In this document: positions 13,338-63,399 of the stretch, one piece after another
How the letters are laid out: every line of letters begins with the position of its first letter
Numbering within the stretch: the stretch's first letter is position 1
Source of the DNA: Octopus sinensis
Taxonomy: Eukaryota
DNA: 64,000 bases
Direction of reading: 5' to 3'
NCBI RefSeq assembly: GCF_006345805.1
Contig: NW_021831836.1
Span: 1-64,000 of the forward strand
Made by a program: the position numbers and the translations under genes
Notes under the pieces: model-generated
The model's input: the letters and a program-made list of their open reading frames with translations, nothing else
The model's database searches: none
What the model was told of the DNA's origin: nothing

Positions 13338-13384
13338 GACATGTTAAAGTTGTCCGTGCCATCTATAATTACAGTGCACAAAGA
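13338..13384 (+). CDS. OSTF1: Osteoclast-stimulating factor 1, first visible coding exon (start of SH3): (G)HVKVVRAIYNYSAQR
   Basis: TTTCAG acceptor and GTAAGT donor, phase 1 in and phase 0 out. Resembles vertebrate OSTF1 GQVKVFRALYTF and joins in frame to 41489. Confidence 0.85.
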
Positions 13385-22870: not shown

Positions 22871-22879
22871 TTTATGTCA

Positions 22880-24109
22880 TATGACTCAAAGGGCCTTAGA
22901 GTCAATCTAGCAAAAGCCAAAGTCTTAGTAAGTAGGAAGGCAGACAAGTTACAAATCCCTTCAGGTGGATGGCCCTGCTCAATTTGTAGAAAAGGCATAG
23001 GTAGAAACTCTGTAAGATGTACTCAGTGTAAGATATGGACACATAAGAGATGCAGCAATATCAAAGAAGGTTAACTCAGAAGATAGTTTTTGTATGTGGC
23101 AGATGCACAGGGGCAATAAACACTGAAGATGTACAGAAAACAGATTCCATCACAAGCCAGGGGAAAAAACAAGTAATTCATAGTTTCCATTACCTTGGTG
23201 ACCAAGTCAGTAGTGGGGGTGGATACTCTGAGAGCGTAGCTGCTAAAATAAGAATAGTCTGTACAAAGTTTTGAGAGCTCCTACCTCTGCTGGTAACAAA
23301 GGGCCTCTCAGAGTGAAAGGTAGTCTGTATGATGCATGTGTGCAAACAATCATACTACACAGCAGTGAAACATGGGCTGTGACTGCTGAGGACATGTGTA
23401 GGCTTAAAAGAAATGAAGCTAATATGCTCTGCTGGATGTATAATGTCAGTGTGCATACACAACAGAATGTAAGTGCCCTGAGAGAAAAGTTGGATATAAG
23501 AAGCATCAGATGTGGTATGCAAGAGAGACAACTGCACTGGTATTGTCATGAAGAAGAGTCACACTCTAACAGTGGAGGAAAATTGTGGAAGAGGTAAACC
23601 CAGGAAGACAAGGGATGAGGTGGTGAAGCAAATGTTGGGCCTCACAGAGGCTATGGCAAGCGGCCAAGATCTTTGGAAATATGCTATGCTTGAGAAGACC
23701 CAGTAATCCAAGTGAGATTGTAACCATAGCTGATGCCAGTGTCACATATCTGGCCCATTTAAAAGTACCCTTCAAATTTCGGGCAATATGCTTTGCATAA
23801 GAAGACCTGTTGAGTCAAGTGAAATCGTAGTTGTGGCTGATGCCAATGCTGCCTGACTGGCACCTATGCCAGTGGCATATAAAAAGCACTATTCCAGTGT
23901 GGTCAATGCCAGTGATGCCTCACTGGCTCCCATGCCAGTCGCATGTAAAAAGCACCTACTATACTCTCAGAGTGGTTGGCATTAGGAAGTGCATCAAGCT
24001 GTAGAGACCTAGTCAGATTGAAGCCTGGTGCAACCTCCTGGCTTGCTAGTCCTCTGTCAAACCATCCAACCCATGCCAGCATGGAAAGCAGATGTTAAAC
24101 GATGATGAT
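22880..24109 (+). mobile_element. Second, older 5'-truncated RTE copy with (GAT)n tail
   Basis: KGLRVNLAKAKVL and CSICRKGIGRNSVRCTQC, homologous to 21664-22161; ends GTTAAACGATGATGAT. Confidence 0.88.
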
Positions 24110-24929: not shown

Positions 24930-24968
<39 letters not shown>

Positions 24969-24989
24969 TTTTATTTATTATATAGAAGG

Positions 24990-25040
24990 AGCTTCTACAG
25001 GACTAGAACTGTTTCATTCAAGAGAAATCTTCAGGAAGCT
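24990..25040 (-). ncRNA. Type I hammerhead ribozyme (PLE terminus, left arm)
   Basis: Exact reverse complement of 39916-39966. Confidence 0.85.
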
Positions 25041-26118
25041 AGTTAACAAGAATTGTATTGGCATTTATACATTTAGGCAGGTTTAACGGGGTGTTGGTGG
25101 GGGACTTTTTTGGGGGTCGGCATAGCGCAAAATATCATACTTGGGGGAGTGGTCAAGGAGTCAGTGTTAAATTAGATAGAAGAATAAATAAAAAAATAAA
25201 AAAATAAAATAAAAAAATAAAAAAATAAAAAAACCTATATATAAGAAGAACCTATATATAAAAAAAGGGGGAATAGAGTTTTAGGTAAATAAGGAGATTC
25301 TCACTTATACCTATGCACACATGTATACATACATACACACACATACAAACATATATACATATACATACACACATACATACACACACATATATATACATAT
25401 ATATACACTTACCCATACACATACATATACATATCTACACATACACATATATGTATACATACACACACTCACATGCATACACGTATACACACATGTGTAT
25501 ATATACACACACGACCTCACATACATATACGCACAGAAAAATATATATACACATACACACACATACTCACATACACGCATACACACACTTATCCACACAC
25601 ACACATGCACACACAGCACACTAGTCCCTATATACACATATATACACATACACACACATATACACACACATACATACATATACATACATGTATATATATA
25701 TACATATGTGTACCTATGCAAACCTACACATACACACATATATATACACATACAAATACAGACCCATTCCCTAATTTTAATTTTATTATCTTCGTTTATT
25801 ACTTTTGTTATCTTTGGCCACTTGGTCACAAACATCTTGGCTATGACAGCCAGTCCATTTATCTGTCTACTGGAAAACAAGCACACATTCACTCACGCAC
25901 ACTCTTTAGCACGTACTCTCACTCATTCGTACACTCATACACATACACGCACGCACGCACGCGTTATATTCATACATACATCCATCTACATACATTCACG
26001 TATATACACATACGTATGCGTACCTACAGATTTATGTCTACACTCTTAGAAGGCTAGTCTATATATATACACCAATAAATATAAATACACACACATACAT
26101 ATACACCTACATACAGAT

Positions 26119-26193
<75 letters not shown>

Positions 26194-26550
26194 TACACAT
26201 ACACACATATACACACACATACGCATACACACACATATACATATATATACACTACACGCACATACACATGTACATGCGTACCCATACACACACACACACA
26301 CGCGCGCATCCATATATACACATAAGTACACACATGCGTAAAAGTATACATATATCTATGCTTACACATACACACACACACACACGCGCCTCCTTATATT
26401 CATACTTACATGCATACTCAAAAAATAAGTAAATAGTAAAATATATATACGCGCAGTTATTCGTACATGCGTACTCAAAATAAATAATAAATATTAAGTA
26501 TATGTACGTGCAGTTACCTATTATATAGACGGATACATACATATAAACTT

Positions 26551-26597
<47 letters not shown>

Positions 26598-27353
26598 CAT
26601 ACATATATACACATACACATACACATACATATATACATACACATATATATACACACACACACATACACATACATATATACATATATATACATACTTACAC
26701 ACATGTACATATAAATACACACATAGATAACTCTACGTACCTACATATGCATAAACACACGAGCGTACGCGCATATTTACATATACACATACACATACAC
26801 ACGCATATATATACATACATACATACACATACACACATGTATACACACACACACATATATATATATATATTTATATATACATATACATACATATACACAT
26901 ATATATATATATATACATATATATACACATATACATATATATATACACATATATACACATACACACATATACACATATATATACACACACACACACACAT
27001 ACATACACACATACATACACATATACATACATATACACACACGTATACACATATACATATACATATACACATACACACACATATATATAAATGTGTGCAA
27101 ACATACATACATTCTCATACAAGCAGACAGACACACTTACATTTACATATATACACACACTTACACACATATATACATACACATATACATACATACATAC
27201 ATACATACATACGTATATGCATACATACACACACACACATATATATATATATATACATACATACATACATATACACATACCCATACATATATATACACAC
27301 ATATACATATACACATGCACATACTTATATCTCTACATACTCGCATATACATA

Positions 27354-27387
<34 letters not shown>

Positions 27388-27685
27388 ATATATATATATA
27401 ATATATAATATAATATATTACATATACACACACATACATATACCTATATACATGTATATATACACACATACACATATATACACATCTACAATTTGTATCT
27501 ACACTCACATACCTGCACATACACATAACTCTACATACCTACATATACATCGACATACTCGCGTACACTCATATATATACACATATATACATATACACAC
27601 ACACATACATATACATATACATATACATACATATACATAAACATACACATACATAATACACATATACACACACATACATATATGC

Positions 27686-27724
<39 letters not shown>

Positions 27725-27763
27725 TATACACACACATACATATATGCATATATATATATATAT

Positions 27764-27801
<38 letters not shown>

Positions 27802-28289
27802 TATATATATATACATATATATATACATACATACATACATACACATATACATACATGTACATATACACATACACCCACATATATATACACACACATACAT
27901 ATATCAACAATTGAGGGTAAAGTTAATTAGTTATTAATCAATTTCACCAAGTATTCAGTATGTAAAAGGACCATTATTTTTATGAGTAAACAATGTCTGA
28001 GGGAAAATATTCTCTAAGTAGTGGAAGAGGCTAAAAAACTTTTTTGGCTGCTATCTCTAGAAAGTTCAGTATGCGGCAAAGCAATCCACTTCACTAAGCC
28101 CTAATTATATAATATTTTATACATACATACACATACATACACACATACATATACACATACATATGCATACACACATGATACACATATACAAGCGTGCACA
28201 TACAATATGTGAGAGGTCTTAGGAGAAAAGGTAATCGGGGGTGCTAGGGGAACGGTGGGTTTGGGGGGGTTTTTGTGGGTGGGGTGTCA

Positions 28290-28790
28290 TCAATCTGGTT
28301 GCCGGGTAGGTCTATAGTTCTTGTAGTTCGCATACTTCTTATGCATACAATTTGGGGAGTGTTCTGAGATTTTGTTAAGGAGAGGGCCTTTGGCGAACAA
28401 GATCTCTAGGCTCTCCGATATGCAGAGGTCACAGCAGGTATGGCCTCCTGTGTACGAGCGCGCCTTCTGTAGTAGTTTCCACTTGGTCTTGAAGGGGATG
28501 GAGTTCCTTTTAAGGTAACAGATGTGGGCGGCGAGGGTAGTTTGGTTGGATTTATCCTGTCGCCGGAACGAGTGTGTGTGTGCGTACCAACGGGTCTTAA
28601 AGCTGTTTGACGTCATTCCTATGTAGGATTTTCTTTTATCGTCAGGGCCTGATCTTACCTCGCATGTATATACTAGGTCCCTCTGTAGGCAGTTGTTGTT
28701 GAGGGGGCAGGTGGTTTTATCAGGGCAGTTGCAATTGCTATTGGACGTTGGATGGGCCTCGGAAAAAGTAGATATGTTAAGTTTTTTCAC
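28290..28790 (-). pseudogene. PLE GIY-YIG endonuclease domain, left copy, in line with RT
   Basis: CNCPDKTTCPLNNNC, LVYTCEV, SYIGMTSNSFKTRWYAH, CCDLCISE, LLNKISE. Confidence 0.9.
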
Positions 28791-30266
28791 ATTGTTGTTG
28801 GCTAGGTTCCTGGCTAGATTGGGCGTTGTAGAGTAGGAGAGTCTATAGTGTTCTTATTTAGGATAGTGTAGTACTTATGTTGGGTGGGGAAGTTTTTCTG
28901 TAGGAGAGTGAAGAAGATTTTTGCTACAGTGTAGCGACCTCATGTTTGAAGGGGGGGTTGTACCAGCTAATGTGTCTTCGTCTATTTTTCCTGGGTTGGC
29001 GTGGGGCTATACTAGTATAGGTAATCTTATCTTTGAAGCCACTGCGGGCCAGGGCCTCGTTGTAATAGGGGGCTGCGCGGCCTTAAAGATATCTTCCGTG
29101 GCGGACAGGCTAGAAATTCTAATTGAGACACTTTTTACTAGGTTATCTAATATATTTTTGGGGTGGTTGGAATTAATATCTTATATTTAAGGGATTCATT
29201 CGTTTGTGGTACGGGTAATAAAGTGAGGTTTTTAAGTCGAGGGTGACATCAAGGAAGTTAGCTTTAGTTAAGTTGGATTCTAAGGTAGTCCTAAGGCCTA
29301 AGTTTTTAAAGAAGGTGTAAAGATTCTTCCGGAACCCATCCGTGGTCCTGGGGTTTATTTTGTGGAGGGCGAAAAGGCCGTCATCGCGGTAAAGACCACC
29401 GGAGAGGCCTGTGAATAGGGTTTTCAGCCTATGGAGGATGAAAAGGCCCACTAGGTCACTTATTTCAGCAGAGTCGTTAGCACCCATGCTGACGTCGAAG
29501 GGGGTCACAGATTTTTTGTTGATCCAGTGGGATCCGTCATAGAGAAGAAAAGTCTTACGTGCGTGGAGGATCACATCTTGCTCGGCCCTCGTGATGTGGA
29601 AGACCTCCTGGCGAAGTTAATCGCGTCGATCAGCAAGCTCTCCGATATGGAGGCGTAGTAATCCTCGATATCCAGTTGTAGGAATCGGGTGTTGCTTTTA
29701 TCAGGTAAATCCCGGAACCAGGTTATTGCCTCGGAGGTCCTATTCCAGAGTGGAAGGGGTGAAGCTTCACGCATTTTTGGTAAAATCCTGTTCAGGATCT
29801 TCTTGCTGACGGATCCGATGTCAGACTTGGTTGGGTTAATCAAACGGACCGACGGTTTATTTTCGAAATGGTCTTTGTGGTCTTTCAGGGTGAAGTGTGG
29901 GGACTTCACCCTCAGGGGTTCAGTTCGGTCATCGATTTTAAGGGAGGTGGCAATCTCTTTCCCGGCTAAATTGGTTTCAGTTAGCGCTGCGTCGTCTACT
30001 TTCTTGTACTTAGCTGTGATGGCGTTATCGGCTAGTCTGTTGTAGGTATCCGGAGTCACCGCGTAAATATTTTTTGTCTTGTCTGAAGGGACATGGAGGT
30101 TCTGGGAGCTTTTCATTTTCGAAAGCTTCTCATTCAGTTCCGTTTGGAAAGGTAGGTTGACTCTCCTGAATTTGATGTTTTTTATCATGAGGAAGAGGTC
30201 TTCTTCAAACGGTTCAAGTAGGCTGTTGGTAGGAGGGGCCTTATTTGATTTGAAGCCGTACTTATC
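28791..30266 (-). pseudogene. PLE reverse transcriptase and linker, 5'-truncated and frameshifted
   Basis: FTLKDHK, VRLINPTKS, LDIEDYYASI, MGANDSAEISDLVG, LYRDDGL, FLDVTLDL, then SNHP and WYNPP-type linker motifs. Confidence 0.9.
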
Positions 30267-30714
30267 CAATTGCAACTGCCCTGATAAAACCACCTGCCCC
30301 CTCAACAACAACTGCCTACAGAGGGACCTAGTATATACATGCGAGGTAAGATCAGGCCCTGACGATAAAAGAAAATCCCACATAGGAATGACGTCAAACA
30401 GCTTTAAGACCCGTTGGTACGCACACACACACTCGTTCCGGCGACAGGATAAATCCAACCAAACTACCCTCGCCGCCCACATCTGGTACCTTAAAAGGAA
30501 CTCCATCCCCTTCAAGACCAAGTGGAAACTACTACAGAAGGCGCGCTCGTACACAGGAGGCCATACCTGCTGTGACCTCTGCATATCGGAGAACCTAGAG
30601 ATCTTGTTCGCCAAAGGCCCTCTCCTTAACAAAATCTCAGAACACTCCCCAAATTGTATGCATAAGAAGTATGCGAACTACAAGAACTATAGACCTACCC
30701 GGCAACCAGATTGA
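30267..30714 (+). pseudogene. Inverted second copy of the GIY-YIG domain
   Basis: Near-identical to 28290-28737. It reads SHIG instead of SYIG, IWY instead of ICY, and ENL instead of ESL. Confidence 0.92.
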
Positions 30715-31210
30715 TGACACCCCACCCACAAAAACCCCCCCAAACCCACCGTTCCCCTAGCACCCCCGATTACCTTTTCTCCTAAGACCTCTCACATATT
30801 GTATGTGCACGCTTGTATATGTGTATCATGTGTGTATGCATATGTATGTGTATCTGTATGTGTGTATGTATGTGTATGTATGTATAAAATATTATATAAT
30901 TAGGGCTTAGTGAAATGGATTGCTTTGCCGAATACTGAACTTTCTAGAAATAGCAGCCAAAAAAGTTTTTTAGCCTCTTCCACTACTTAGAGAATATTTT
31001 CCCTCAGACATTGTTTACTCATAAAAATAATGGTCCTTTTACATACTGAATACTTGGTGAAATTGATTAATAACTAATTAACTTTACCCTCAATTGTTGA
31101 TATATGTATGTGTGTGTATATATATGTGGGTGTATGTGTATATGTACATGTATGTATATGTGTATGTATGTATGTATGTATGTATATATATATGTATATA
31201 TATATATGTA

Positions 31211-31251
<41 letters not shown>

Positions 31252-31494
31252 GCATATATGTATGTGTGTGTATATGTGTATTATGTATGTGTATGTATAT
31301 GTATATGTATGTGTGTGTGTATATGTATATATGTGTATATATATGAGTGTACGCGAGTATGTCGATGTATATGTAGGTATGTAGAGTTATGTGTATGTGC
31401 AGGTATGTGAGTGTAGATACAATTGTAGATGTGTATATATGTGTATGTGTGTATATATACATGTATATGGGTATATGTATGTGTGTGTATATGT

Positions 31495-31546
<52 letters not shown>

Positions 31547-32329
31547 AATATATATATATTATATGTATATGCGAGTATGTAGAGATATAAGTATGTGCAT
31601 GTGTATATGTATGTGTGTGTATATATATGTATGGGTATGTGTATATGTATGTATGTATGTATATATATATATATATGTGTATGTGTGTGTGTGTATGTAT
31701 GCATATACGTATGTATGTATGTATGTATGTATATGTGTATGTATATATGTGTGTAAGTGTGTGTATATATGTAAATGTAAGTGTGTCTGTCTGCTTGTAT
31801 GAGAATGTATGTATGTTTGCACACATTTATATATATGTGTGTATGTGTATATGTATATGTATATGTGTATACGTGTGTGTATATGTATGTATATGTGTAT
31901 GTATGTGTGTATGTATGTGTGTGTGTGTGTGTGTATATATATGTGTATATGTGTGTATGTGTATATATGTGTATATATATATGTATATGTGTATATATAT
32001 GTATATATATATATATATGTGTATTATATGTATTATATGTATATAAATATATATATATATATGTGGTGTGTGTATACATGTGTGTATGTGTATGTATGTA
32101 TGTATATATATGCGTGTGTATGTGTATGTGTATATGTAAATATGCGCGTACGCTCGTGTGTTTATGCATATGTAGGTACGTAGAGTTATCTATGTGTGTA
32201 TTTATATGTACATGTGTGTAAGTATGTATATATATGTATATATGTATGGTGTATGTGTGTGTGTGTATATATATGTGTATGTATATATGTATGTGTATGT
32301 GTATATATGTATGTATATGTATATATATA

Positions 32330-35300
32330 CTAGCAGCATAGCCCGGCGTTGCCCGGGTATGTAAGAGCCCCTAGTAGGCAACGACTAATCCCAATGTAGT
32401 CCTTTCCCTCCAGGGAACGAAGGTGCATGTGGACGTTGCAATGTCTTGTCTTCACTGAATACTTCTGTATATACGATGTTCCTAGCTGTCCGTTTGGGCG
32501 AAAACATGAAAACATCATTGCGCCTCCCAACGCGTGAACAGCCCACGTAGAGTTGAACGTGGGCGAAGCACTGTTCGCCCAAATGTAACCCAGCGACTTG
32601 TAGCGTTTGGCCTTGGGGTTTATTGATGGACATTGCGAAGCAGAGTTTAACAGGAAACTGAGAACGCCTGAAGTGGATGGTAGGTCAGCGCCCGACGGTT
32701 GAAGGTGCATCCGTGGAATGAAGACGTCCTCTCCCTTCCCACAACCGGTAAGTATGTGGGCCGTTATTAAATGTGGTGCCAAATGTTTCACAACCAAACG
32801 TGTGCCGTTGCACTGTTTAGGTGGAACCAAATTCCTGATGAGCATAATGGGCGCACCGACTTTTAACTTCAGGATGTGTGGTGGCAGGCCTGGCGGTTCA
32901 AGTGAATTCAGGAATTCAACAGGATAATCGGCAAGCTGGGCGGGGTCTGCTGTCCTATCTATAGATTGTAGACGTGGACATCACCAGGAATAGCTTCAAG
33001 TAGCTGGATATTGATGGAGTTGACGGTTGTATTTTTGGGTGCGAGAATAGCTCTGCCTGCCAGCCATTTTAGGTCGCGTAAATTGTTTTGTAGGTCGTGA
33101 AGACAGCGTCCCGGAGGCTAGCAGGGGTGTCGACAATGGTGCAAAGTGAGTCCAATTGAACGTAGCCATCCGCATCAGACAGCATCCTATTTTCACCGAG
33201 CAATAAGAGGTCCCTGGAGAATGCAGCGGATCCGCTGTCACCAATTAACTGCGCGCGCATGTTAGTTTGGAGGTGCAAGGGCCGCACATGTGCCCAAAGA
33301 GCTGACGACTTAAGGCACGCGCGCACGGCATCGCCACGGGTTCCTTTTGGAATAACAGGTAGAGTCTGCCTGAAGTCTCCTGAAAGAAGTAAAGTTAATC
33401 CTCCCATGGGGGCCGTAGAGTCTTGCAGGGACCTGTCCAGTGCCTCAAGGGCGCCTTTGTGTGCCATAGTGCACTCGTCCCATACGATGAGTTTGCATCT
33501 GCGCAGAATGTCGGCCTGTTCTGAGTTCTTGGCGATGTTGCAGATAGGTGACTCGGACTTTGCCAGATCGAGCGGGAGTCTGAAGGCAGAGTGGGCGGTT
33601 CTGCCACCCGGAAGCAACGTGGCCGCGATACCAGAGGAAGCTACAGCCAGGGCAATGTCCGTGTTGCGTCTGACCTCTGCCAGAATTAGTTTAGTGACGA
33701 AGGTTTTGCCAGTGCCGCCGGGTGCATCAAGGAAGAAAATCCCCCCACGTTGCTGTCTGACAGAGTCTACGATGGTGTTGTAGGCTATGCGTGGTCTGGA
33801 AGCAGCCGTGGTTCATTATCTTGGACGTACTGGTGCAGTTCCTCAATGCAGGGAAGTTTCGCGTAACAATTCAGCAGACATAACATTGGCGTGTTCACGT
33901 GTGGGTGGTGGAAGCCGTACTCTGTTAAAGCAGACCCACCCATATCGATGACAGCGTCTTCGAGTTGAATGAGCGCAAAATTTGTAAATGAAGTTGGTGA
34001 ACGTGATCTCGGCGGAAGGGCAGTGTTTGCTGAGCCGTACGTAAGAAGTCGTGCGACATGTCATCCCTGTATTTCATCCAGAGACTTAGTGGATCACTAA
34101 GCTGACATTTTTGAAGAAGGATTGCGAAAAGATGTCGTAGGGCCGAATGCGTTTGCAGTAAAGCACCCTGTGCCATCGTGGCGTCCCACTGGGAGTCATC
34201 CTCTAGAAGGCCAAGTCTCATACATGCTTCCCTGAAGGTGTCGCACAGAACCCCATTGACGGTACGTATATTGGCGAAACCTGTTGGACCAGTGACCTCA
34301 TGTAGAAGGAGACGGAGGTAGAAGCATTCTTGCTGGTTTGGCGGGATGTTGTAAACTCGACCCGGCAGGAGTCAAACTTGACGCCTGGGAAGCTTTCGAC
34401 GTTTTTGCCGGATTTCCGTCGAACCAGGTGTTTTTAGACCACACGAAGTACGATGGGACCTGTGGGTACAAAAGCGTTCGAGCGAAGTCATCACGTTGGC
34501 ATAATTTGGAAGAAACCAGTCAACGTTGTGTCTTTAGGGCTGGTGGCTATCTGCACAGCACTTTGCTCTGTGAAGTAAATCTGCTGTCCATTTTCCAAGT
34601 GTACAGCAAGCTGCACCACAGCCGGGTGTCTCCGATGGAGCGGGAAGCCGTAAATGCGCCAAAACGCTTCGTTGCTGCTGAGGTACCGGCCAGCCAAGTA
34701 GTTGGACACTTCGTCGCGACTGGTGGTCCTCTGGATGCTGAACATGGCAGCATCGCTGCCTTTGTTGATATATTTGCAGACATATTGTATTGACCTGATG
34801 GAGCTGCAGAACTCAACGTTGACGTGGGCTTTGAATATCTTCGACAGGAGAGGACAGTAGGGGACAATGTAGCTGTTGTCCACTTGATGTCGCCCAACCG
34901 TAATCGTGCGGCCTCCATTGGCTGGACTCCTTCGTTTGTACAGCGGATACCCATCGCCGCCTGTTTGGGTCTCCAAAGTGAACCGTTTAGGGAATCCCTT
35001 TGAGCAGGCTAATCCGTTTTTGTAGCATGGTGTGTTGGCGTAATTTGGTCCACAGGGCCCGTGTACCATGGTAGTGCGGACAATTTCGTAGAGTCCGGGG
35101 TCCTCATCGGGGTCAGGAATCTCGGCGGAAATGAATTTGTCAATGTCATTAGTCTCGATTTTATGAGTGAGCCAAATTAAGATGTGAGCATGTGGCAAGC
35201 CCCTCTTTTGCCACTCGACCGAAAACATGTGGCACCTGACATGCCCGAAAATCTGACTCTTAACTATCAAATCCTTCATTTTGCCCAAATTCAGACGGAA

Positions 35301-38300
35301 AACCCTAGCAACGATGTCGTGTCGATGGGTGTGAGATTGACCCGGGAGGAGTTCGCGAGTGATTTCGTCGCAGCTGGGATTGCACGTGTAGGTGATAAAG
35401 AGGTCCGGCCGGCCGTAAATGCGCACGTAGGTCAAGGCGTCTTGGGTCCTTTCACGCATATATCGCGGTCCTCCCGTGAAGGTGGAGGGTAGAATGCATG
35501 GCTTGCCGATGTTGCGAGGGTCATTTTCTTGTTGCAAACCGTCACGGAGATGAATGTAGGAGTCGGAGCGAAGTTTGGTCTGATTAAGTTTAATGTATAG
35601 CAGCCTTTCCGATTCCATTTTTGCGGCCATATCGACGGCGAACTGGTTGAATAGCTGACGACAACGAGGCAATAAGTTGAACTCACCCTCCCTGACCATG
35701 AACCGGTATGAGTAGAACGCCCTGCAGGAAACCGTCTTTGATGCCGCAGTAGTTTGATTGGAGGGCTGCCGTAAAGGAATTCCGAAGTGGTAGCCGTTCT
35801 CCCCATAAGGGAAAAGCAATGGATAGTGAAGCGCGTCATAAGATCTGTGAGTCTCGCTGATCCTGTGTAGGTTGTTACCACGGGAGGAGATGATTATGTC
35901 ACGGCTGTTGTGTTGCTCTCCGTGTATAACTGCGGCAATTTCGTTGCACGCAGGTGCGTTGAAACGGCGTTCGTGCTCCCCGTGGGGTCGTTTATCAGCA
36001 TCAATGACAACGGTGAAGTTTGGAGATGGAGCACTGTCCAAGGCATATCTGAAGCTGCAGACGTAGCTGTTGATATCATGAAGCATGGTTTGGAGACGGA
36101 GAAGAATGTCTTGCGGGGAACATAGCTTGTACCCGGTATTATTCCAAGGCGTGCATCAACCTGGTGGTTGTAGTCGGCAATGAAGTATATTTGGAGGAAA
36201 GAAGACTGCTGAATCTCGTCTGGCAGAAGTGACCCAATAAGATGGTAGACCTGTCCCTGCACTTTGAAAGTAGGCATCCAGCCTTCTCTGGGAGGATTTT
36301 GGCCCAAAAGAGGTCATTTGGAATGAGCAGTTGTACTTTCGAATTATTTCAAGGAATTATGACGAATCGGGGGTTAAACCCGCCGCGAGATCCTTCAGTG
36401 GTTGAGGTGGTTCCCGTAGGGGTGGCAGGTCCACTTTGCCACCAGAGCAGCACAAACCAGGTGGCTCTCCGGGCCATTTCTTGGCTTTGCAAAACTGGCA
36501 TACAATTGTCATTGACCCTATCTTGATGTCGTCACGCAAGGAAAGTTAATTGTGGCGTCGTAGTTGAATGCTAGTGACAACCAGAAAGCGGGGGCAGGGG
36601 TACGTACACCACGAATGATATCCCGACGTTTGTTGATACTCTCAAGTCGAGTGCACCGTGCCTCAGCAGATTCAGATGCACGTGCGACAGCGGTAGCAGT
36701 GGCATCCCTTGAAAGCCTTTCAGCTCTCGCCTCAGCACCCTCTGAAGCCCTAGCAGAAGCAGTGTTAATGGCATGTCTGGATGTCCGAATAGTCCGTTGG
36801 TGTGGAGTTTCGCAGATCGAGCCCTGGCTGTGTTTGCGGCGTTAGCAGCTTGGCGAGCTCTCCTCTGTTGAGGTGTTTCGGCAGCTTTGGCCATGGCTTT
36901 GTTTGCGGCGTCAGCATCTTGGAGTTCTCCTCTGCTGTGAGGTTTCGACAGATCGTGTCCTGGCAGTGCTAGTGGCGTTAGCCGCATTCCGAATGGCCCT
37001 TTGTTCGGGGTTCTCGCGAGCTCTGCGGATGGAAGCACAGTAAGAAGCCCGCATGTTTTGGCTGGACTGTTGCTCTTTCGTCAACCTCGAGCGGAGGGAA
37101 GATCTGTACGCTGCGACCCTTGCAAGTCGGTAGAACGGTCGCTAGTAGTTTCAGATGCCTGAGCAGCGGCATAACGGGAAGCTGTTTGCGAGAGGCGCAA
37201 GGCGGTTTCCTCGTGGGTCTCGCGTGCCCTTCTAGCCCTGGCAAGCCGATGCCTTGGCCGTCCGAGGGCTGAGGAGGGTCCTTCTCTTCTTGGGTGGCAT
37301 TTTGGTGGATAGCAATGTGTTTGGCAAAGGTGTAATAAAAAGGAACACGTGGGGTAAGTATTTTGGTGGATAGCAATGTGTTTGGTAAGGTGTAATAAAA
37401 AGGAGCTCGTGGGGTAAGTATCCGAAAACGTATAAAAATGTACAAAAACGGCCAAAAAGCTGGCAGCAATGTGAGTGACAACAACGAAAAAGTCAAAAGT
37501 GATCAAACTGAACAAACGAAAGGAAAAGTTTTTGATGCACACGACAAAGTGGTTTATAATAAACCAAGAGTTTGCAAGTAGCGTCCGAGGACCGTTAGGG
37601 TACGTCAAAAATTGAAGGTAAAACGTTTGGGGTGGTAGTTATAAAGAAAGTTTAAACCAAAAAGTATTCGAATAACTTGCGGCTGCAGCAGCTATTAGCA
37701 GAAGTGGCGGTGTTGGGGTAAAGTCTCGAATGTAATTTCTTCCTGGTAGGAATTGGTTGGATCGAATTATCGATAGCTAAAAAGGTCAAGTTGCGTCCCC
37801 TAGACAGTCTGGTTTGTGTTTAATACACAAATTTGTTTGCTATGTGTGCCACATATGATTAAATTAACCGATTTTTTCCAATAATGTATCCTATTGGAAT
37901 AAAAAGAGCTATATAGCTCCTTGGAGCAGACATGATGCTCGTTGTTAAAAAAAAGATTCCTGCCAATTTGTGAAAGATTTGTCGAAAATATGTCATCTTG
38001 AATTTGAACGCGATTTCCCAAAATGGCATGATTTTATCGATTGTTTCTGATGGTAAGGTATTGCATGGAAAACTAACGTCAGAATTGAGTTTCTTAGGGT
38101 AACATTAAGCTTCACCATGAGTTGGTGAAAATCGATTGCAAGTTGTGAAAACTACCATAGATAATGCGTTGCATAAAAAAGCTTAGATTCTCGAGTTGCG
38201 TCCCCTAGACAGTCTGTGGTTCATGTTTATGATTCTCGACCCCATGTCGAATTTATCAATTTTTTTCAGAACTGGGGGAACTTTTCAAAATTTTCGCTGC

Positions 38301-38440
38301 GTTAGTTTTGAATTATGACATTGGGCTATGTGTGTGTCAAGTTTCATCAGAATCGGTTGAAAGCCGTGGTCAGGGTGAGGGTACGAGAAAACAGACACAC
38401 AGAAGCACGCACAACAAACTGCCGTTTATATATAGAGAGA
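32330..38440 (-). mobile_element. Full-length-type Helitron (family A), 6.1 kb, with disrupted RepHel
   Basis: Minus strand 5' A|TCTCTCTATATATAAACGGC and 3' CCCGGGCAACGCCGGG hairpin followed by CTAG|T. Inserted in a TA array of the PLE right arm. Confidence 0.93.
32385..37038 (-). pseudogene. Helitron Rep/PIF1 helicase, split by frameshifts and stops
   Basis: N-terminal CQFCKAKKW..CCSGG and FKVQGQVYH. HUH Rep motifs PDLFITYTCNP, VEWQKRGLPHAHIL, YVCKYINKG. Helicase motifs [35 protein letters not shown]. Confidence 0.95.
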
Positions 38441-38841
38441 TATATATATATATATATTGTGTGTGTAAGTTATATGTATGTATCCGTCTATATAATAGGT
38501 AACTGCACGTACATATACTTAATATTTATTATTTATTTTTTGAGTATGCATGTACGAATACTGCGCGTATATATATTTTACTATTTACTTATTTTTTGAG
38601 TATGCATGTAAGTATGAATATAAGGAGGCGCGTGTGTGTGTGTGTATGTGTAAGCATAGATATATGTATACTTTTACGCATGTGTGTACTTATGTGTATA
38701 TATGGATGCGCGCGTGTGTGTGTGTGTGTATGGGTACGCATGTACATGTGTATGTGCGTGTAGTGTATATATATGTATATGTGTGTGTATGCGTATGTGT
38801 GTGTATATGTGTGTATGTGTATATATGTGTATATATATATG

Positions 38842-38885
<44 letters not shown>

Positions 38886-39915
38886 ATCATGTATGTATCT
38901 GTATGCGGTGTATATGTATGTGTGTGTATTTATATTTATTGGTGTATATATATAGACTAGCCATCTAAGAGTGTAGACATAAATCTGTAGGTACGCGTAC
39001 GTATGTGTATATACGTGAATGTATGTAGATGGATGTGTATGAATATAACGCGTGCGTGCGTGTATGTGTATGAGTGTACGAATGAGTGAGAGTATGTGCT
39101 AAATAGTGTGCGTGAGTGAATGAGTGCTTGTTTTCCAGTAGACAGATAAATGGACTGGCTGTCATAGCCAAGATGTTTGTGACCAAGTGGCCAAAGATAA
39201 CAAAAGTAATAAACGAAGATAATAAATTAAAATTAGGGAATGGGTCTGTATTTGTATGTGTAATATATGTGTGTATGTGTAGGTTTGCATAGGTACACAT
39301 ATGTAATATTACATGTATATATGTTATGTATGTGTGTGTATATGTGTGGTGTATGTGTATATATGTGTATATAGGGACTAGTGTGCTGTGTTGCATGTGT
39401 GTGTGATATGTGTGTGTATGCGTGTATGTGAGTATGTGTGTGTATGTGTATATATATTTTTCTGTGCGTATATGTATGTGAGGTCGTGTGTGTATACGTG
39501 TATGCATGTGAGTGTGTGTATGTATACATATATGTGTATGTGTAGATATGTATATGTATGTGTATGGGTAAGTGTATATATATGTATATATATGTGTGTG
39601 TATGTATGTGTGTATGTATATGTATATTTTTGTATGTGTGTGTATGTATGTATACATGTGTGCATAGGTAAAGTGAGAATCTCCTTATTTACCTAAAACT
39701 CTATTCCCCCTTTTTTTATATATAGGTTCTTTTTATATATAGGTTTTTTTATTTTTTTATTTTTTTATTTATTCTTCTATCTAATTTAACACTGACTCCT
39801 TGACCACTCCCCCAAGTATGATATTTTGCGCTATGCCGACCCCCAAAAAAGTCCCCCACCAACACCCCGTTAAACCTGCCTAAATGTATAAATGCCAATA
39901 CAATTCTTGTTAACT

Positions 39916-39966
39916 AGCTTCCTGAAGATTTCTCTTGAATGAAACAGTTCTAGTCCTGTAGAAGCT
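39916..39966 (+). ncRNA. Type I hammerhead ribozyme (PLE terminus, right arm), sense to OSTF1 pre-mRNA
   Basis: AGCTTC (stem I), CTGAAGA core, stem II T.T plus TTC/GAA with TCTT loop, GAAA, stem III ACAG/CTGT with loop TTCTAGTC, GTA cleavage triplet at 39958-39960, GAAGCT (stem I). Confidence 0.85.
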
Positions 39967-40052
39967 CCTTCTATATAATAAATTAATTTTACTCTGCTAT
40001 GTATTGAGTACCTTATTTACTGTGGTTAACCCCGAATCAACCCGGGACCTAC

Positions 40053-40085
<33 letters not shown>

Positions 40086-41058
40086 ATATATTATAGGTTA
40101 TCTACTATTGTTTCACTAGGTTCATTAGGAGTGACATAATCATAATACAGTTGGTTAGATTGCACAACATATTGCATAACACCCAATTCATCAGGCTGTA
40201 AAATAAACAAGTGAGCATTCGTTTGTTGATTAATGAAAAACAAAAAAAAACATTAGAATTACCAACATGTAAGAAATTTAGAGGTGGGTGTCTCCAGTCT
40301 CCCAATCTAGAGAGATGGATAGTAAAATAAGTTTGTAAAGATAAGGACAGTTAAAAGCATTAACATCCTAAAGAAATCATTAAGCCTAGTGACCTCATCT
40401 ACAAAGGCTCATCTACCACATGGTTCTGGGTTCAGTCCTCTTTTGTGATGACTTGGGGAAGTGTCTTCTAGATAGCTTTGGGCCAACCAGAGCCTTGTGA
40501 GTGGATTTGGTAGACAGAAACTGAAAGAAGCTGTCATATCATCATCATCATCATTGTCGTTTAATGCCTGCTTTCCATGCTGACATGGGTTGGACAGTGT
40601 GACTGAGGGCTGGCAAGCCAGATGGCTGCACCAGGCTCCAATCTGATCTGGCAAAGTTTCTACAGCTGGATGCCCTGCCTAACACCAACCACTCTGAGAG
40701 TGTAGTGCGTGCTTTTACAAGCCACCAGCACGAGGGTCAGTCAGGTGGTACTGGTATCAGCCACGCTCAAAAGGTGCTTTTTACGTGCCACCTGCACTGG
40801 AGCCAGTCTGGCGGCAACATACATATATATTTATAATGTATGTGTGTGTGTCTTTGTTTCTGTGTTTCTCTCCCAACACCTCCTCTGCTCAACAACTGGT
40901 GTTGGTGTGTTTACGTTACTTGTAACTTAGCGGTTCAACAAAAGAGATTTATGAAATAAGTTCCAGGCTTAAAAAAAGAAGTACAGGAGTTGATTCACTT
41001 GACTAAAAATTCAAGGCGGTGCCCTAGCATGGCTGCAGTCTAATAATTGAAGCAAGTA

Positions 41059-41488: not shown

Positions 41489-41603
41489 GATGATGAATTA
41501 ACTTTTGAAGAAGGAGACATAATTTATATTACTGATCAAAAAGATTCCAATTGGTGGAAAGGAAAGTGTGGGTCAAAAGTTGGCTTAATACCAAGCAATT
41601 ATG
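41489..41603 (+). CDS. OSTF1: OSTF1 exon, SH3 core: [38 protein letters not shown]
   Basis: TTTCAG/GTAAG boundaries, 115 nt (phase 0 to 1), canonical SH3 WW and GLIPSNY motifs. Confidence 0.95.
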
Positions 41604-41869: not shown

Positions 41870-43067
41870 GCACAAAAATGCCCCCTAATATGAAGATCAA
41901 ATACCTAAGTTTCACAGGTATATCATTAATGTGAGAAATGAAGTTAATTTTGAAATTTCACAGATAGCTAACATGGACAAAGTCTCTCTGACATTTGATG
42001 TGCCATCAAACAAGGGTGCTAAAACTGTGACTGTTAAAATATGTTGCCATGAAAAGACACTATACAGTTGTATTAAGCATGCTGTGTTGATGACACAAAA
42101 TTGCCACCTTTTCTAATTTTTAAAAGAAAGACATTGTCTAAAGAAAGTATACCCAATGGTATTTTCATATCCACCCAAAAGGTTGGATGGATGAGGAAGG
42201 AATGAAATTGTGGCCTGATAAAGTGTAGTCCAGGCATCCTGGTGGGTTATTAAAGAAACCTGCCTTATTACTGTGGGCCTAGTTTGGGCTCATAGAAATG
42301 AGCTTGTTAAGAGGAAACTCAGGGAACTGAAGACCTGGTTAGCTGTAATTCCAGGAGGCCTATCCAACCAGTTACAGCCTTTAGATGTTTCAATCAATAA
42401 ACCATTTAAAAGATTCATGCAGAAGGAGTGGAGTAAGTGGATGGAGTCTTCAGATTTTGAAGTGACACCAATAGGAAGGTGTGTGAATGGGTAAAAAGTT
42501 CCTGGAATGCTGTAAAAGAAAAGATAGTTGTGCAATCATTTAAAAAATGTGGCATTAGTAATCTCCTTGATGGTACTGAGGATGATTTATTGTTCAAAGA
42601 AGATATTGATGACCCAGATCTTATTGCAGAGAATTCCAGTGATGAAGAGAGTACTGTTAATATGGATGGCAACAACGACAATGAGTAACTGTAACTATCT
42701 AAAGGAATTCATCACATATATTGTACTTTGCTGATTGGTTTGTAACAGATTTTATTTGCTTTTAGCTTGCATGTACCAGGATTCATTGATACCAATGTAT
42801 ATTTCTTTTTTGCTATGGTAAATTTAATTTAGATTCCTTTAAAGGTGAGAGTAAAGCTACATGCGATTTCATACTTTATTCCAGTATACTGTCACAATAT
42901 TGTATTTCATGCACAGGATCATACAATTTTCATTACAAAACCACTTTAAAATATTTTATAATAAATCTATGATGAAACGTAGTAAAATTGTTTTTTCTGC
43001 AAAATATCCTTGTAAAATAGGGATGCGTCTTATGTGAGGGTGCATCCAATGCGCTGGCAAATATGAT
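41870..43067 (+). mobile_element. pogo/Tigger-type transposon remnant
   Basis: IANMDKVSLTFDVP, IPGGLSNQLQPLDVSINKPFK and VQSFKKCGIS. The right end resembles a pogo subterminal repeat/TIR. Boundaries approximate. Confidence 0.8.
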
Positions 43068-54435: not shown

Positions 54436-54817
54436 GGACGTTTCCTCTTTTAATGATAATAAACTCTGGTACAATAAGAATATCCTTGTTTCCAGAGAAA
54501 GTAAGTTTCCTAAATTTCTTTACTCATTCAGTTTTCATTCAAATTCTAGTGATATTATTAACTCTGTTCTGAGCCCTTGTTAGGCTATTGAAGTCCAGGA
54601 ACTTGTAAAGTGTATCACCAAGGAAGACCATTATCTTTTCATGTTGCTGGTGGTACCAGCATATGCAGTTCATATGAAATTTTAAGTTTTACTTTTCTGC
54701 TGTCTAGCTTTCCCGTTCTTATTCAAATTTCAGATTTCTCTTGCAGCCAAATTGTGTTAAAGAATTTGTGAATTAACTTCAAAGAAATATCTTTAAAATA
54801 ATTTTTAATTTTGCCAG

Positions 54818-54909
54818 TTGAAGAAAATACACAGGCTCTTGATTTTCCATTACATGAAGCTGCTCGACGAGGAAATTTGAACTTTCTCACAGAATGCATA
54901 GCAAATGGT
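54818..54909 (+). CDS. OSTF1: OSTF1 exon, first ankyrin repeat: (V)EENTQALDFPLHEAARRGNLNFLTECIANG
   Basis: GCCAG/GTAAGT boundaries, phase 1 to 0; resembles OSTF1 PLHEAAKRGNL. Confidence 0.93.
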
Positions 54910-63311: not shown

Positions 63312-63399
63312 GTTTGTTGATGTCTTTTTTAATAATATTTTTGCAGAACATTATAAATAAATGGTAGGAACTCCATATGGTGTACCCAGTGCAAGCTAT

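What the first reader, a model, noticed from the sequence alone, without database searches (positions are those of the whole stretch)
39916..39966. Intact hammerhead ribozyme in the sense strand of an OSTF1 intron, 1.5 kb before the SH3 exon
Seen: full core (CUGAAGA, GAAA, GUA), 6-bp stem I, 4-bp stem III with a CUAG palindrome in its loop, and a short stem II with U.U at the base. The mirror copy at 24990-25040 is identical although the rest of the arms has diverged. Established: PLE termini carry minimal type I hammerheads that often cleave weakly as monomers and better as dimers. Inference: the host pre-mRNA may be cut after 39960, or the ribozyme may be masked by pairing with the antisense copy in the same intron.
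Basis: partly seen in the sequence, partly recalled or inferred. Interest (0 to 1): 0.75.

Follow-up and report, generated by a model that had tools for sequence, protein, structure and literature searches.

The report
Retrotransposon hammerhead ribozyme inside OSTF1 intron
The 51-base motif is a real hammerhead ribozyme, the standard 3'-end ribozyme of a dead Penelope-like retrotransposon (Hydra clade) lying as an inverted pair in an intron of an octopod OSTF1 gene; it is an ordinary member of a known kind and probably does little to the host transcript.

Summary
Bases 39916-39966 (+) carry a complete type I hammerhead core with 6-, 3- and 4-bp helices, and 25040-24990 (-) is an identical copy. 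A descriptor scan finds only these two sites in the window and none in shuffles. They are the outer 3' ends of two head-to-head, 5'-truncated copies of a Hydra-clade Penelope-like element (PLE) inserted in a (TA)n tract of the 28-kb OSTF1 intron 13385-41488. Eighty-two related PLE loci carry 61 hammerheads on the ORF strand. A covariance model built from 18 of them, without the window, hits only the two window sites (29.1 bits, E about 1e-6). The U.U at the base of helix II is a family trait (20 of 46 distinct relatives), not decay. Helix III is the family's dimer-type palindrome enlarged by a 6-nt tandem duplication. The copies' identity is uninformative, because the arms differ by only 16 substitutions in 1.6 kb. 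Host pre-mRNA cleavage is untested. It looks minor: helix II is very weak, there are no tertiary contacts and no sense partner for a dimer, and a perfect antisense copy lies upstream (duplex -92.7 versus -8.5 kcal/mol). This is a new member of a known kind.

The parts
39916..39966 (+). Type I hammerhead ribozyme motif on the sense strand of the OSTF1 pre-mRNA. The predicted cut is after 39960.
   Evidence: Direct reading; own descriptor scan; covariance model R1 from related PLE hammerheads, 29.1 bits, E 1.4e-6.
24990..25040 (-). Identical hammerhead copy at the 3' end of the longer PLE copy. It is antisense in the OSTF1 pre-mRNA.
24973..30266 (-). Longer PLE copy. It is 5'-truncated and holds a degenerate RT with several frame changes, a linker, a GIY-YIG endonuclease, about 3.2 kb of microsatellite-rich 3' region and then the hammerhead.
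   Evidence: ORF pieces; 2897 homologues of the RT core; same domain order in full-length homologues; Hydra-clade signatures compared with PMC8557442.
28293..28853 (-). CxCX5C linker plus GIY-YIG endonuclease open frame of the longer copy (CNCPDKTTC, YIGMT, CCDLC..E..N..CMH).
30267..32329 (+). Inner part of the shorter inverted PLE copy (endonuclease ORF 30079-30714 and the 3' region). It pairs with 28737-26582 at 92%.
   Evidence: Self-BLAST; ORF list.
32330..38426 (-). Helitron-like insertion that interrupts the right arm only.
   Evidence: Arm map; Pfam Helitron_like_N E 1.6e-52 and PIF1 E 7e-37.
38427..39986 (+). Outer part of the shorter inverted PLE copy. It ends with the hammerhead and pairs with 26591-24973 at 94.6%, with 16 substitutions.
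39987..40047 (+). PLE 'tail', present at the right end only. It contains ACUC-N11-GAGU-ACC (39991-40012), the local version of a GCUC..GAGCACU hairpin conserved after the hammerhead in relatives.
   Evidence: the tail concept comes from PMC8557442 and PMC11167929.
24939..24964 (.). (TA)n target microsatellite on the left flank.
   Evidence: (TA)n preference of the Hydra clade.
40053..40090 (.). (TA)n target microsatellite on the right flank.
13338..13384 (+). OSTF1 exon encoding (G)HVKVVRAIYNYSAQR, the start of the SH3 domain. The donor GTAAGT follows.
   Evidence: aligned to Argonauta OSTF1-like P0001.
41489..41603 (+). OSTF1 exon encoding [38 protein letters not shown], the rest of the SH3 domain.

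Best explanation
The motif is the 3'-terminal hammerhead ribozyme of a Penelope-like retrotransposon of the Hydra clade. The element inserted into a (TA)n microsatellite in the 28-kb OSTF1 intron of an octopod cephalopod. It inserted as the head-to-head, doubly 5'-truncated inverted structure that PLE integration often produces. Both copies are dead: the RT has frameshifts and stops, and a Helitron fragment later landed in the right arm. The right-hand copy happens to point the same way as OSTF1, so its hammerhead is transcribed in sense as part of the intron.

In the life of the element, this family of hammerheads is built to act as a dimer. Helix III is a self-complementary segment whose fourth pair can form only between two molecules. 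The element's own template RNA must have escaped 3' cleavage, since inserted copies keep both sides of the cut.

In this locus the ribozyme is most likely a passive passenger. Its catalytic core is intact and a 6-nt duplication lets helix III fold within one molecule. However, helix II is almost without stability, there is no loop-loop tertiary contact, and there is no second sense copy for dimer formation. A perfectly complementary antisense copy has already been transcribed 15 kb upstream in the same intron. I therefore expect little or no cleavage of the OSTF1 pre-mRNA. Any slow cleavage inside the intron should be tolerated by co-transcriptional splicing.

Shown here: the motif, its family membership, the element's anatomy, and the host gene and strand. 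Inferred: the dimer mechanism, the low activity, the masking and the lack of effect on the host.
For: Motif and chance.

Element anatomy: the inverted arms and unique centre are. RT and GIY-YIG pieces lie on the same strand as each hammerhead. The RT core has 2897 homologues. Full-length homologues of about 710-720 aa share RWK/RWR, DKT, SNHP, CNCx5C and YIG.

Hydra-clade diagnostics in PMC8557442 section 11 are met: DKT, CxCX5C, CxxC and CxH around E/N, a (TA)n target, and hammerheads present. The same paper describes adjacent inverted 5'-truncated copies and one-sided tails as common PLE structures.

Family evidence: 61 hammerheads lie on the ORF strand in 52 of 82 related loci, against 1 on the other strand and 0 in 40 shuffles. 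They sit a median 154 nt before the ATG and 153 nt after the stop. Model R1, built without the window, hits only the two window sites. U.U at 10.1/11.1 occurs in 20 of 46 distinct relatives.

Dimer design: the fourth helix III pair is complementary in 45 of 46 relatives, although my descriptor did not require it.

Weakness and masking: P(hammerhead fold) is 0.02 for the isolated 51-mer, and helices I and III fall below 2% in a +-100 nt context. The duplex with the antisense copy is -92.7 kcal/mol against -8.5 for the local fold. The helix II hairpin is -0.1 kcal/mol against a family median of -3.95, and a competing hairpin that sequesters core bases is -1.3.

Literature: PLE hammerheads cleave poorly in vitro (PMC4209133). 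The Poseidon hammerhead needs protein, is dispensable for insertion, and no RNA ends were seen at its site (PMC11167929). Splicing survives cleavage of an intron by a hammerhead (Dye et al. 2006, as cited in PMC2995048).
Against: No experiment or RNA data bear on activity at this locus. Nearest-neighbour folding ignores the tertiary structure of the three-way junction. By that measure the window motif actually folds better as a monomer than most relatives (0.02 against a median of 0.001). The 6-nt duplication gives a stable intramolecular helix III, the feature that makes fungal and protist PLE hammerheads active as monomers (PMC4209133). Local folding during transcription is faster than long-range pairing, so masking is not guaranteed. 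The hammerhead lies 3.3 kb from the stop codon instead of about 150 nt. The intervening microsatellite-rich DNA is unexplained. Whether the inverted structure arose at integration or later is not resolved.
Confidence: 0.78

Rival explanations
1. The ribozyme is active in the host transcript. The enlarged helix III lets it fold as a monomer during transcription, it cuts a meaningful fraction of OSTF1 pre-mRNA after 39960 before the exon 1.5 kb downstream is made, and OSTF1 output falls, in the manner proposed for the intronic CPEB3 ribozyme.
For: The core is intact. Helix III is a 4-bp hairpin, unlike the 3-bp dimer-type helix of relatives, and the monomer fold probability is higher than in most relatives. 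Precedent: inhibiting the CPEB3 intronic ribozyme raises the host protein, and timing relative to the next exon matters (PMC10919898). Fast ribozymes abort splicing (Bentley and co-workers, as cited in PMC2995048). Retrozymes are reported to be depleted from introns, which suggests a cost (bioRxiv 10.64898/2026.07.22.740005).
Against: Helix II is nearly unstable and competes with a hairpin that sequesters A6-A9. In context, helices I and III are under 2%. G10.1-C11.1 and tertiary contacts are absent. A perfect antisense partner lies upstream. PLE hammerheads tested so far are slow or protein-dependent. Only about 1.5 kb separates the cut site from the 3' splice site; at the Pol II elongation rates I recall (a few kb per minute; not from a tool or paper read here) that leaves well under a minute. 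Slow intronic cleavage is tolerated.
Confidence: 0.1
2. The consequential feature of the locus is not the ribozyme but the 3.7-kb inverted repeat. In the pre-mRNA the two arms form a long double-stranded hairpin that buries the hammerhead. That hairpin could attract dsRNA-binding and editing enzymes or shorten the effective intron. This reading is compatible with the best explanation.
For: The arms are 92-95% identical over about 3.7 kb, with only 16 substitutions in the outer 1.6 kb. The 51-bp duplex alone is -92.7 kcal/mol. The inner arms are transcribed first and would bring the outer arms together across the Helitron bulge (geometry). Extensive A-to-I editing in cephalopods is established knowledge, which I recall rather than checked here.
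Against: No RNA data. Nascent RNA is coated by proteins and spliced during transcription, so long-range pairing over 1.5-15 kb may not form. Much of the arms is low-complexity TG/TA repeat.
Confidence: 0.35
3. The motif is a chance match to the hammerhead consensus in AT-rich repeat DNA, or the two ends are terminal inverted repeats of a DNA transposon or foldback element rather than retrotransposon termini.
For: No Rfam hammerhead family matches, even at E<=10. The minimum-free-energy fold is no better than shuffles (z = 0.17). The arms are inverted and microsatellite-rich.
Against: Shuffles give no strict descriptor hits. A model from independent PLE hammerheads hits only these two sites. 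Rfam also misses the hammerheads of six related loci searched, clear ones included, so its silence is uninformative. The arms carry RT and endonuclease coding sequence in the orientation matching each hammerhead. The right-end tail carries the family's conserved post-hammerhead hairpin.
Confidence: 0.02

Closest known systems
Minimal type I hammerheads of Penelope-like elements (Cervera and de la Pena 2014, PMC4209133)
   Same: Type I topology with an open helix I of 4-6 bp. The motif lies in the terminal repeat region of a PLE on the ORF strand. Helix III / loop 3 is palindromic, which implies dimers. Low monomer activity is expected, and dispersed single copies from truncated elements are common.
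   Different: That paper stresses a conserved G10.1-C11.1 and an extra nucleotide between 9 and 10.1. Here 10.1/11.1 is U.U. Helix II is 3 bp rather than the long helix II of the schistosome families. Helix III is a 4-bp hairpin with an 8-nt loop rather than absent or 1-2 bp.
Hydra clade of C-terminal EN+ PLEs (Craig, Yushenova, Rodriguez and Arkhipova 2021, PMC8557442)
   Same: DKT in place of DKG, a CxCX5C linker, CxxC and CxH around the conserved E and N, insertion into (TA)n, presence in molluscs, hammerheads present, inverted 5'-truncated partner copy, and a one-sided tail.
   Different: The described elements are short (<3 kb). This copy has about 3.1 kb of extra microsatellite-rich sequence between the stop codon and the hammerhead, and it is degenerate. 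The RWK motif cannot be seen because the copy is 5'-truncated. The paper's hammerhead sequences (supplementary file S2) were not available for direct comparison.
Poseidon PAc element of Anolis carolinensis (PMC11167929)
   Same: A PLE whose hammerhead is dispensable for insertion in vitro, where unprocessed RNA is the main template and internal initiation of reverse transcription explains the genomic tail. The window copies keep both sides of the cut, and one end carries a tail.
   Different: It belongs to a different clade. The PAc hammerhead overlaps the ORF start and lacks helix III. It is a vertebrate element.
[quoted passage not shown]
   Same: A self-cleaving motif on the sense strand of an intron upstream of a coding exon. 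Timing of cleavage relative to synthesis of the next exon is the relevant variable.
   Different: Those are conserved across species as single-copy host sequences with measured activity. This one is a recent transposon terminus with a paired antisense copy and a weak helix II. Cross-species conservation at this site was not examined here, and Rfam finds no HH9/HH10 match.
Non-LTR retrozymes of animals (PMC7229834; bioRxiv 10.64898/2026.07.22.740005)
   Same: Type I, dimer-type hammerheads related to PLE terminal repeats.
   Different: Retrozymes are short tandem non-coding repeats that yield circular RNAs. Here there is one sense copy, no tandem array, and adjacent PLE coding sequence.

Membership tests
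Hammerhead ribozyme, type I | Conserved core: C3 U4 G5 A6 N7 G8 A9, G12 A13 A14, A15.1-U16.1, H17 | tested here: met
   CUGAAGA ... GAA A ... U A at the right places; descriptor scan.
Hammerhead ribozyme, type I | Three helices around the core, with the open ends in helix I | tested here: met
   Helix I 6 bp, helix II 3 bp, helix III 4 bp. The covariance model alignment shows no non-canonical pair.
Hammerhead ribozyme, type I | G10.1-C11.1 pair closing helix II | tested here: not met
   The window has U.U. The same U.U occurs in 20 of 46 distinct hammerheads of related PLEs, so it is a lineage trait. Its effect on catalysis is unknown.
Hammerhead ribozyme, type I | Tertiary contact between helix I and loop II, needed for fast cleavage at physiological Mg2+ | tested here: inconclusive
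   Helix I is an uninterrupted 6-bp open stem with no loop or bulge, so no candidate contact is visible. Sequence alone cannot exclude one.
Hammerhead ribozyme, type I | Match to a curated Rfam hammerhead model | tested here: not met
   No hammerhead family at gathering score or at E<=10. The six related loci searched, whose hammerheads include canonical G10.1-C11.1 ones, also give no hammerhead match at E<=1, so the test is uninformative for this kind.
Hammerhead ribozyme, type I | Mg2+-dependent self-cleavage after H17 | not testable with these tools
   Needs in vitro transcription or RNA-end mapping.
PLE-associated hammerhead (Hydra-clade type) | Lies on the ORF strand, downstream of the GIY-YIG endonuclease ORF of a PLE | tested here: met
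   Both copies follow an endonuclease ORF on their own strand. Relatives: 61 on the ORF strand against 1 on the other.
PLE-associated hammerhead (Hydra-clade type) | Sequence and structure match to hammerheads of related elements | tested here: met
   Model R1, from 18 relatives and excluding the window, scores 29.1 bits with E 1.4e-6 at both sites. The next hit has E 0.35.
PLE-associated hammerhead (Hydra-clade type) | Short self-complementary helix III segment (8-10 nt) that can pair fully only in a dimer | tested here: inconclusive
   Relatives: the fourth pair is complementary in 45 of 46, and 37 of 46 segments are fully self-complementary. The window has ACAG/CUGU and a central CUAG, so 12 of 16 positions are self-complementary and the homodimer is -27.0 against 2 x -8.5 kcal/mol. 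The segment is enlarged by a 6-nt duplication and can also fold alone.
PLE-associated hammerhead (Hydra-clade type) | Position about 110-300 nt after the stop codon | tested here: not met
   Relatives have a median of 153 nt. The window has about 3.3 kb (28290 to 24996), filled with microsatellite-like sequence.
Hydra clade of Penelope-like elements | [quoted passage not shown] | tested here: met
   Ordered pieces on the minus strand from 30266 to 28293. Homologues have the same order. Pfam gives only sub-threshold RVT_1 and GIY-YIG hits in homologues and none in the window pieces.
Hydra clade of Penelope-like elements | DKG motif changed to DKT; CxCX5C linker; CxxC and CxH around the conserved E and N | tested here: met
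   SDKTKNIY, CNCPDKTTC and CCDLC..E..N..CMH, set against PMC8557442 section 11. The same motifs occur in homologues.
Hydra clade of Penelope-like elements | N-terminal RWK motif | not testable with these tools
   The window copy is 5'-truncated and starts near residue 95 of the homologues. Homologues carry RWK or RWR.
Hydra clade of Penelope-like elements | Insertion into (TA)n | tested here: met
   (TA)n at 24939-24964 and at 40053-40090 flank the element.
Host-conserved intronic ribozyme (HH9/HH10, CPEB3-like) | Single-copy host sequence conserved across species, or a match to the Rfam HH9/HH10 models | tested here: not met
   There is no Rfam match and the motif is part of a transposon insertion with a twin copy. 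Orthologous introns were not compared.

The most novel reading that the evidence does not exclude
A 6-nt tandem duplication in helix III has turned a dimer-dependent transposon hammerhead into a monomer-capable one. Sitting in sense 1.5 kb upstream of the OSTF1 SH3 exon, it would cleave the nascent pre-mRNA at a rate set by whether the upstream antisense arm pairs with it. Formation of dsRNA by the inverted PLE pair, and its editing, would then act as a switch on OSTF1 output. A lesser novelty that is more likely to hold is the subclass of natural hammerheads with U10.1.U11.1 in place of G10.1-C11.1. It is conserved across many Hydra-clade PLEs and may not have been described or assayed.
Probability: 0.06. 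Interest if true: 0.65.

Novelty: new member of a known kind. Interest (0 to 1): 0.3.

Why it matters
For the host gene it probably does not matter. The locus shows how a PLE insertion places a self-cleaving motif and a multi-kilobase inverted repeat inside an intron that splits a protein domain. Work around the finding gives three things that can be tested. First, many Hydra-clade PLE hammerheads replace the textbook G10.1-C11.1 pair by U.U while keeping covarying neighbours, which asks whether that pair is really needed in vivo. Second, complementarity at a helix III position that can pair only between two molecules is sequence evidence for dimer function. Third, inserted copies always retain both sides of the cut plus a conserved hairpin downstream. 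This fits the view that uncleaved RNA is the template for integration.

Tried and rejected
Rfam at gathering score on the whole window, and at E<=10 on 401-nt and 86-nt slices, gave no hammerhead family. I rejected this as negative evidence once six related loci searched, clear hammerheads included, also failed.

Single-sequence MFE folding had a z-score of 0.17. That is not informative for a three-way junction whose active fold is a minor conformer in all relatives too.

A word-indexed protein search with the endonuclease piece found nothing. Pfam found nothing in the window's RT and EN pieces. The exhaustive HMMER search with the RT core solved this.

MAFFT alignment of all 46 hammerheads (A2) left the 3' half out of register because helix III lengths differ. 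I did not use it and built the model from the 18 class-B sequences with a 9-nt helix III instead (A3).

The covariation counts on A3 are circular for pairing, because my descriptor demanded pairs. I rely instead on shuffles of the loci, on the model search of the window, and on the fourth helix III pair, which the descriptor did not demand.

Supplementary hammerhead sequences of the Hydra-clade paper are not held. A search for octopus hammerhead literature gave nothing relevant. PMC7229834 said nothing about position 10.1 variants. Lunse, Weinberg and Breaker 2017 is cited by papers in the library but was not itself found there.

I considered a DNA-transposon or foldback reading of the inverted arms. 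I rejected it because of the coding content and the tail homology.

Full report
OBSERVATION. Bases 39916-39966 on the + strand read AGCUUC CUGAAGA U-UUC-UCUU-GAA-U GAA ACAG-UUCUAGUC-CUGU A GAAGCU. Every conserved hammerhead core position is present: C3 U4 G5 A6 N7 G8 A9, G12 A13 A14, A15.1-U16.1 and H17=A. Helix I has 6 bp. Helix II has 3 bp above a U.U. Helix III has 4 bp with an 8-nt loop that holds CUAG. The topology is type I, and the cut is predicted after A39960. The reverse complement of 24990-25040 is identical. A descriptor scan of both strands of the window returns only these two sites. In 200 Markov shuffles the relaxed descriptor gives 0.095 hits per shuffle and the strict one gives none. 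The motif is real and is not a chance match.

HOST GENE. Exons collinear with OSTF1 lie on the + strand at 13338-13384, 41489-41603, 54817-54912, 59339-59461 and 63224-63313. The PDB search then gave the highest-scoring single matched stretch to the OSTF1 SH3 domain. The database search with the joined exon peptides gave 310 OSTF1 proteins, the best being 85% identical 'osteoclast-stimulating factor 1-like' of Argonauta hians. The window is therefore from an octopod cephalopod. The intron is 13385-41488 (28.1 kb) and splits the SH3 domain. The cut site lies 1528 nt before the exon at 41489.

WHAT THE MOTIF BELONGS TO. Self-BLAST shows a large inverted structure. Segment 24973-26591 pairs with 39983-38427 at 94.6%, and 26582-28737 pairs with 32329-30267 at 92.2%. 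The centre 28738-30266 is unique, and a 6.1-kb block (32330-38426) is present only in the right arm. That block encodes Helitron_like_N (E 1.6e-52) and PIF1 (E 7e-37) on the minus strand.

The minus strand from 30266 down to 28293 reads, through several frame changes and stops, as a reverse transcriptase followed by a cysteine linker and a GIY-YIG endonuclease. The plus strand from 30267 repeats only the endonuclease end. The locus is therefore two 5'-truncated copies joined head to head, each ending outward in a hammerhead on its own coding strand.

Pfam does not recognise the window pieces. An exhaustive HMMER search with the 147-aa RT core found 2897 homologues. The full-length ones (about 710-720 aa) have the same order of motifs: RWK/RWR, DKT, GLYRDDGL, NFLDVTLDL, SNHP, WFNPPF, CNCx5C and YIG. 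These are the diagnostics that Craig et al. give for the Hydra clade of Penelope-like elements: DKG changed to DKT, a CxCX5C linker, CxxC and CxH around the conserved E and N, insertion into (TA)n, presence in molluscs, and hammerheads present (PMC8557442 section 11). The window copy has SDKTKNIY, CNCPDKTTC and CCDLC..E..N..CMH, with (TA)n on both flanks. The same paper describes an adjacent inverted 5'-truncated copy and a one-sided 'tail' as common PLE structures.

RELATED ELEMENTS. An alignment of ten full-length homologues retrieved 80 loci from metagenome contigs, and two more came from exact-protein look-ups. In these 82 loci (294 kb) my scanner finds 61 hammerheads on the ORF strand in 52 loci, one on the other strand, and none in 40 shuffles. 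In intact elements the cut site sits a median 154 nt before the ATG and 153 nt after the stop. Cut-to-cut units are 2.36-2.85 kb.

The 46 distinct sequences fall into two main classes plus a few intermediates (G.U or A-U at 10.1/11.1). One class has the canonical G10.1-C11.1 (CUGAnGA-G-UG..CA-C-GAAAC). The other has U.U at that position (CUGAnGA-U-[stem]-U-GAAAC), in 20 of 46. The window motif belongs to the second class, so the U.U is a lineage trait rather than decay.

A covariance model built from 18 such relatives, without the window (A3 and R1), hits the window only at 39918-39964 (+) and 25038-24992 (-). Each hit scores 29.1 bits with E about 1.4e-6, covers the full model and has no non-canonical pair. 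The next hit has E 0.35. Rfam finds no hammerhead in the window. It also finds none in six related loci, whose hammerheads include canonical G10.1-C11.1 ones, so its silence says nothing.

HOW THE FAMILY'S RIBOZYME IS BUILT. In relatives the helix III segment is 8-10 nt, for example ACAGAUCUGU or ACACGGUGU. Only three pairs can form within one molecule. The fourth position was not required by my descriptor and cannot pair in a hairpin, yet it is complementary in 45 of 46 sequences with several pair types. Thirty-seven of 46 segments are fully self-complementary. Across all inner positions, 56 of 65 are complementary, against 27.6 +- 3.4 when partners are shuffled. This is sequence evidence for the dimer mechanism proposed for metazoan type I and PLE hammerheads (PMC4209133). 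Accordingly, the monomer hammerhead fold has a median predicted probability of 0.001 in relatives.

The window's helix III is AC[AGUUCU][AGUCCU]GU. That is the consensus ACAGUUCUGU (seen in L050 and L071) with a 6-nt tandem duplication. The result is a 4-bp hairpin and a fold probability of 0.02, in the upper range among relatives (only four of the 46 score higher). Against this, its helix II hairpin is worth only -0.1 kcal/mol, where the family median is -3.95 and only 3 of 46 are as weak. An alternative AAGA/UCUU hairpin that sequesters core bases is worth -1.3.

THE 3' END AND THE TAIL. After the cut both copies read GAAGCUCCUUCUAUAUAAUAAAU. The left copy then runs into A8 and (TA)n. The right copy continues for 61 nt (39987-40047) before (TA)n.

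In relatives, 39 of 47 distinct downstream regions carry GCUC(Y)-N8-26-GAGC-ACU starting 36-56 nt after the cut, against 8 of 246 control windows. Copies that end in (TA)n stop just before this element, at a short TATATA stretch. The window tail has ACUC-N11-GAGU-ACC at 39991-40012, with a compensatory G-C to A-U change.

The tail is therefore PLE sequence. All inserted copies retain both sides of the hammerhead cut. This fits the report that unprocessed RNA is the main template and that reverse transcription starts internally (PMC11167929).

THE MIRROR COPY. The divergence is almost all microsatellite indels. The outer arm has 16 substitutions in about 1.56 kb and none in the terminal 213 nt. 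With about 1% substitution divergence, an unchanged 51-mer is the expected outcome.

WHAT IT PROBABLY DOES HERE. This part is inferred. The motif is transcribed in sense as part of the intron. Five arguments speak against meaningful cleavage.
- Helix II is weak and has a competing hairpin.
- In a +-100 nt context, helices I and III are predicted below 2%, partly because a UAGAAG-CUC-CUUCUA hairpin lies just 3' of the cut.
- There is no visible helix I / loop II contact.
- The model finds no second sense copy in the window, so no dimer can form within the transcript.
- A perfect antisense copy is transcribed 15 kb earlier. The 51-bp duplex is -92.7 kcal/mol, against -8.5 for the local fold and -27.0 for a homodimer. 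The inner arms would pair first and bring the outer arms together.

PLE hammerheads tested so far are slow or need the element's protein, and no RNA ends were found at the Poseidon site. Splicing also survives cleavage of an intron by a hammerhead, whereas a fast ribozyme aborts it.

Two points favour activity. The enlarged helix III is the feature that makes fungal and protist PLE hammerheads work as monomers. Local folding is also faster than long-range pairing. I put meaningful cleavage of the host transcript at about 0.1.

COMPARISON AND NOVELTY. The finding is a new member of a known kind: a PLE hammerhead (known since 2014) of the Hydra clade (2021), in a common PLE insertion structure, in an intron. 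Three by-products may interest specialists. They are the U.U class, the dimer-only covariation, and the conserved hairpin after the cut. I could not check whether these have been described, because the relevant supplementary data and the Lunse, Weinberg and Breaker 2017 paper are not in the library.

UNRESOLVED. I cannot explain why about 3.1 kb of microsatellite-rich sequence separates the stop codon from the hammerhead, where relatives have about 150 nt. I also cannot tell whether the inverted structure arose at integration or later.

Noticed in passing
window 39991-40012; related loci L003-L079, 36-56 nt after each hammerhead cut: A conserved GCUC(Y)-N8-26-GAGC-ACU hairpin follows the hammerhead in 39 of 47 distinct related PLE sequences, against 8 of 246 control windows. 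The window's right-end tail has ACUC..GAGU-ACC with a compensatory change. Copies that end in (TA)n stop just before this element. It may be an RT recognition or priming element. I do not know whether it has been described.
   Followed up: partly
related loci, e.g. L002 7464-7517, L003 4246-4287, L024 37-79 and 2434-2476; window 39916-39966: Twenty of 46 distinct hammerheads of Hydra-clade-like PLEs have U.U at 10.1/11.1 instead of the textbook G-C, with covarying pairs next to it. G.U and A-U also occur at this position.
   Followed up: partly
related loci L002-L079, helix III segments: The fourth helix III position, which can pair only in a dimer, is complementary in 45 of 46 sequences. Thirty-seven of 46 segments are fully self-complementary.
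   Followed up: yes
window 25041-28289 and 30715-32329 plus 38427-39915: About 3.1 kb of TG/TA/TACA microsatellite-like sequence lies between the endonuclease stop codon and the hammerhead in both arms. Intact relatives have about 150 nt there. The origin is unexplained.
   Followed up: partly
window 32330-38426: A Helitron-like fragment (Helitron_like_N and PIF1 helicase ORFs on the minus strand, degenerate) is inserted in the right arm only, so it is younger than the inverted PLE pair.
   Followed up: partly
L024, L044, L045, L047, L049, L051, L042: Metagenome contigs of 2.5-2.9 kb (L042 is 5.1 kb) carry the same hammerhead at both ends of one intact ORF, with cut-to-cut units of about 2.4 kb. 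They could be tandem genomic copies, or assemblies of longer-than-unit or circular transcripts.
   Followed up: no
window 43487-44972: A tandem array of about four units of 333-352 bp (86-98% identical). Each unit ends in CTTGTGAAGACCTGTTGAGGCAAGTGAAAATCAAA, and a related 53-mer lies at 22611-22663.
   Followed up: no
window 21667-23550: A direct duplication with a period of about 1.2 kb (81-85% identical blocks).
   Followed up: no
window 41889-42202: Open frames just after the SH3 exon look to me like a DDE transposase fragment (from memory). Pfam gave no supporting match, only a weak Ig_TgrO1 hit below threshold.
   Followed up: no
whole window and loci L009, L024, L039, L044, L047, L051: The Rfam 15 hammerhead models detect none of these PLE hammerheads, even those with a canonical core and G10.1-C11.1. 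Rfam-based annotation therefore misses this class.
   Followed up: yes
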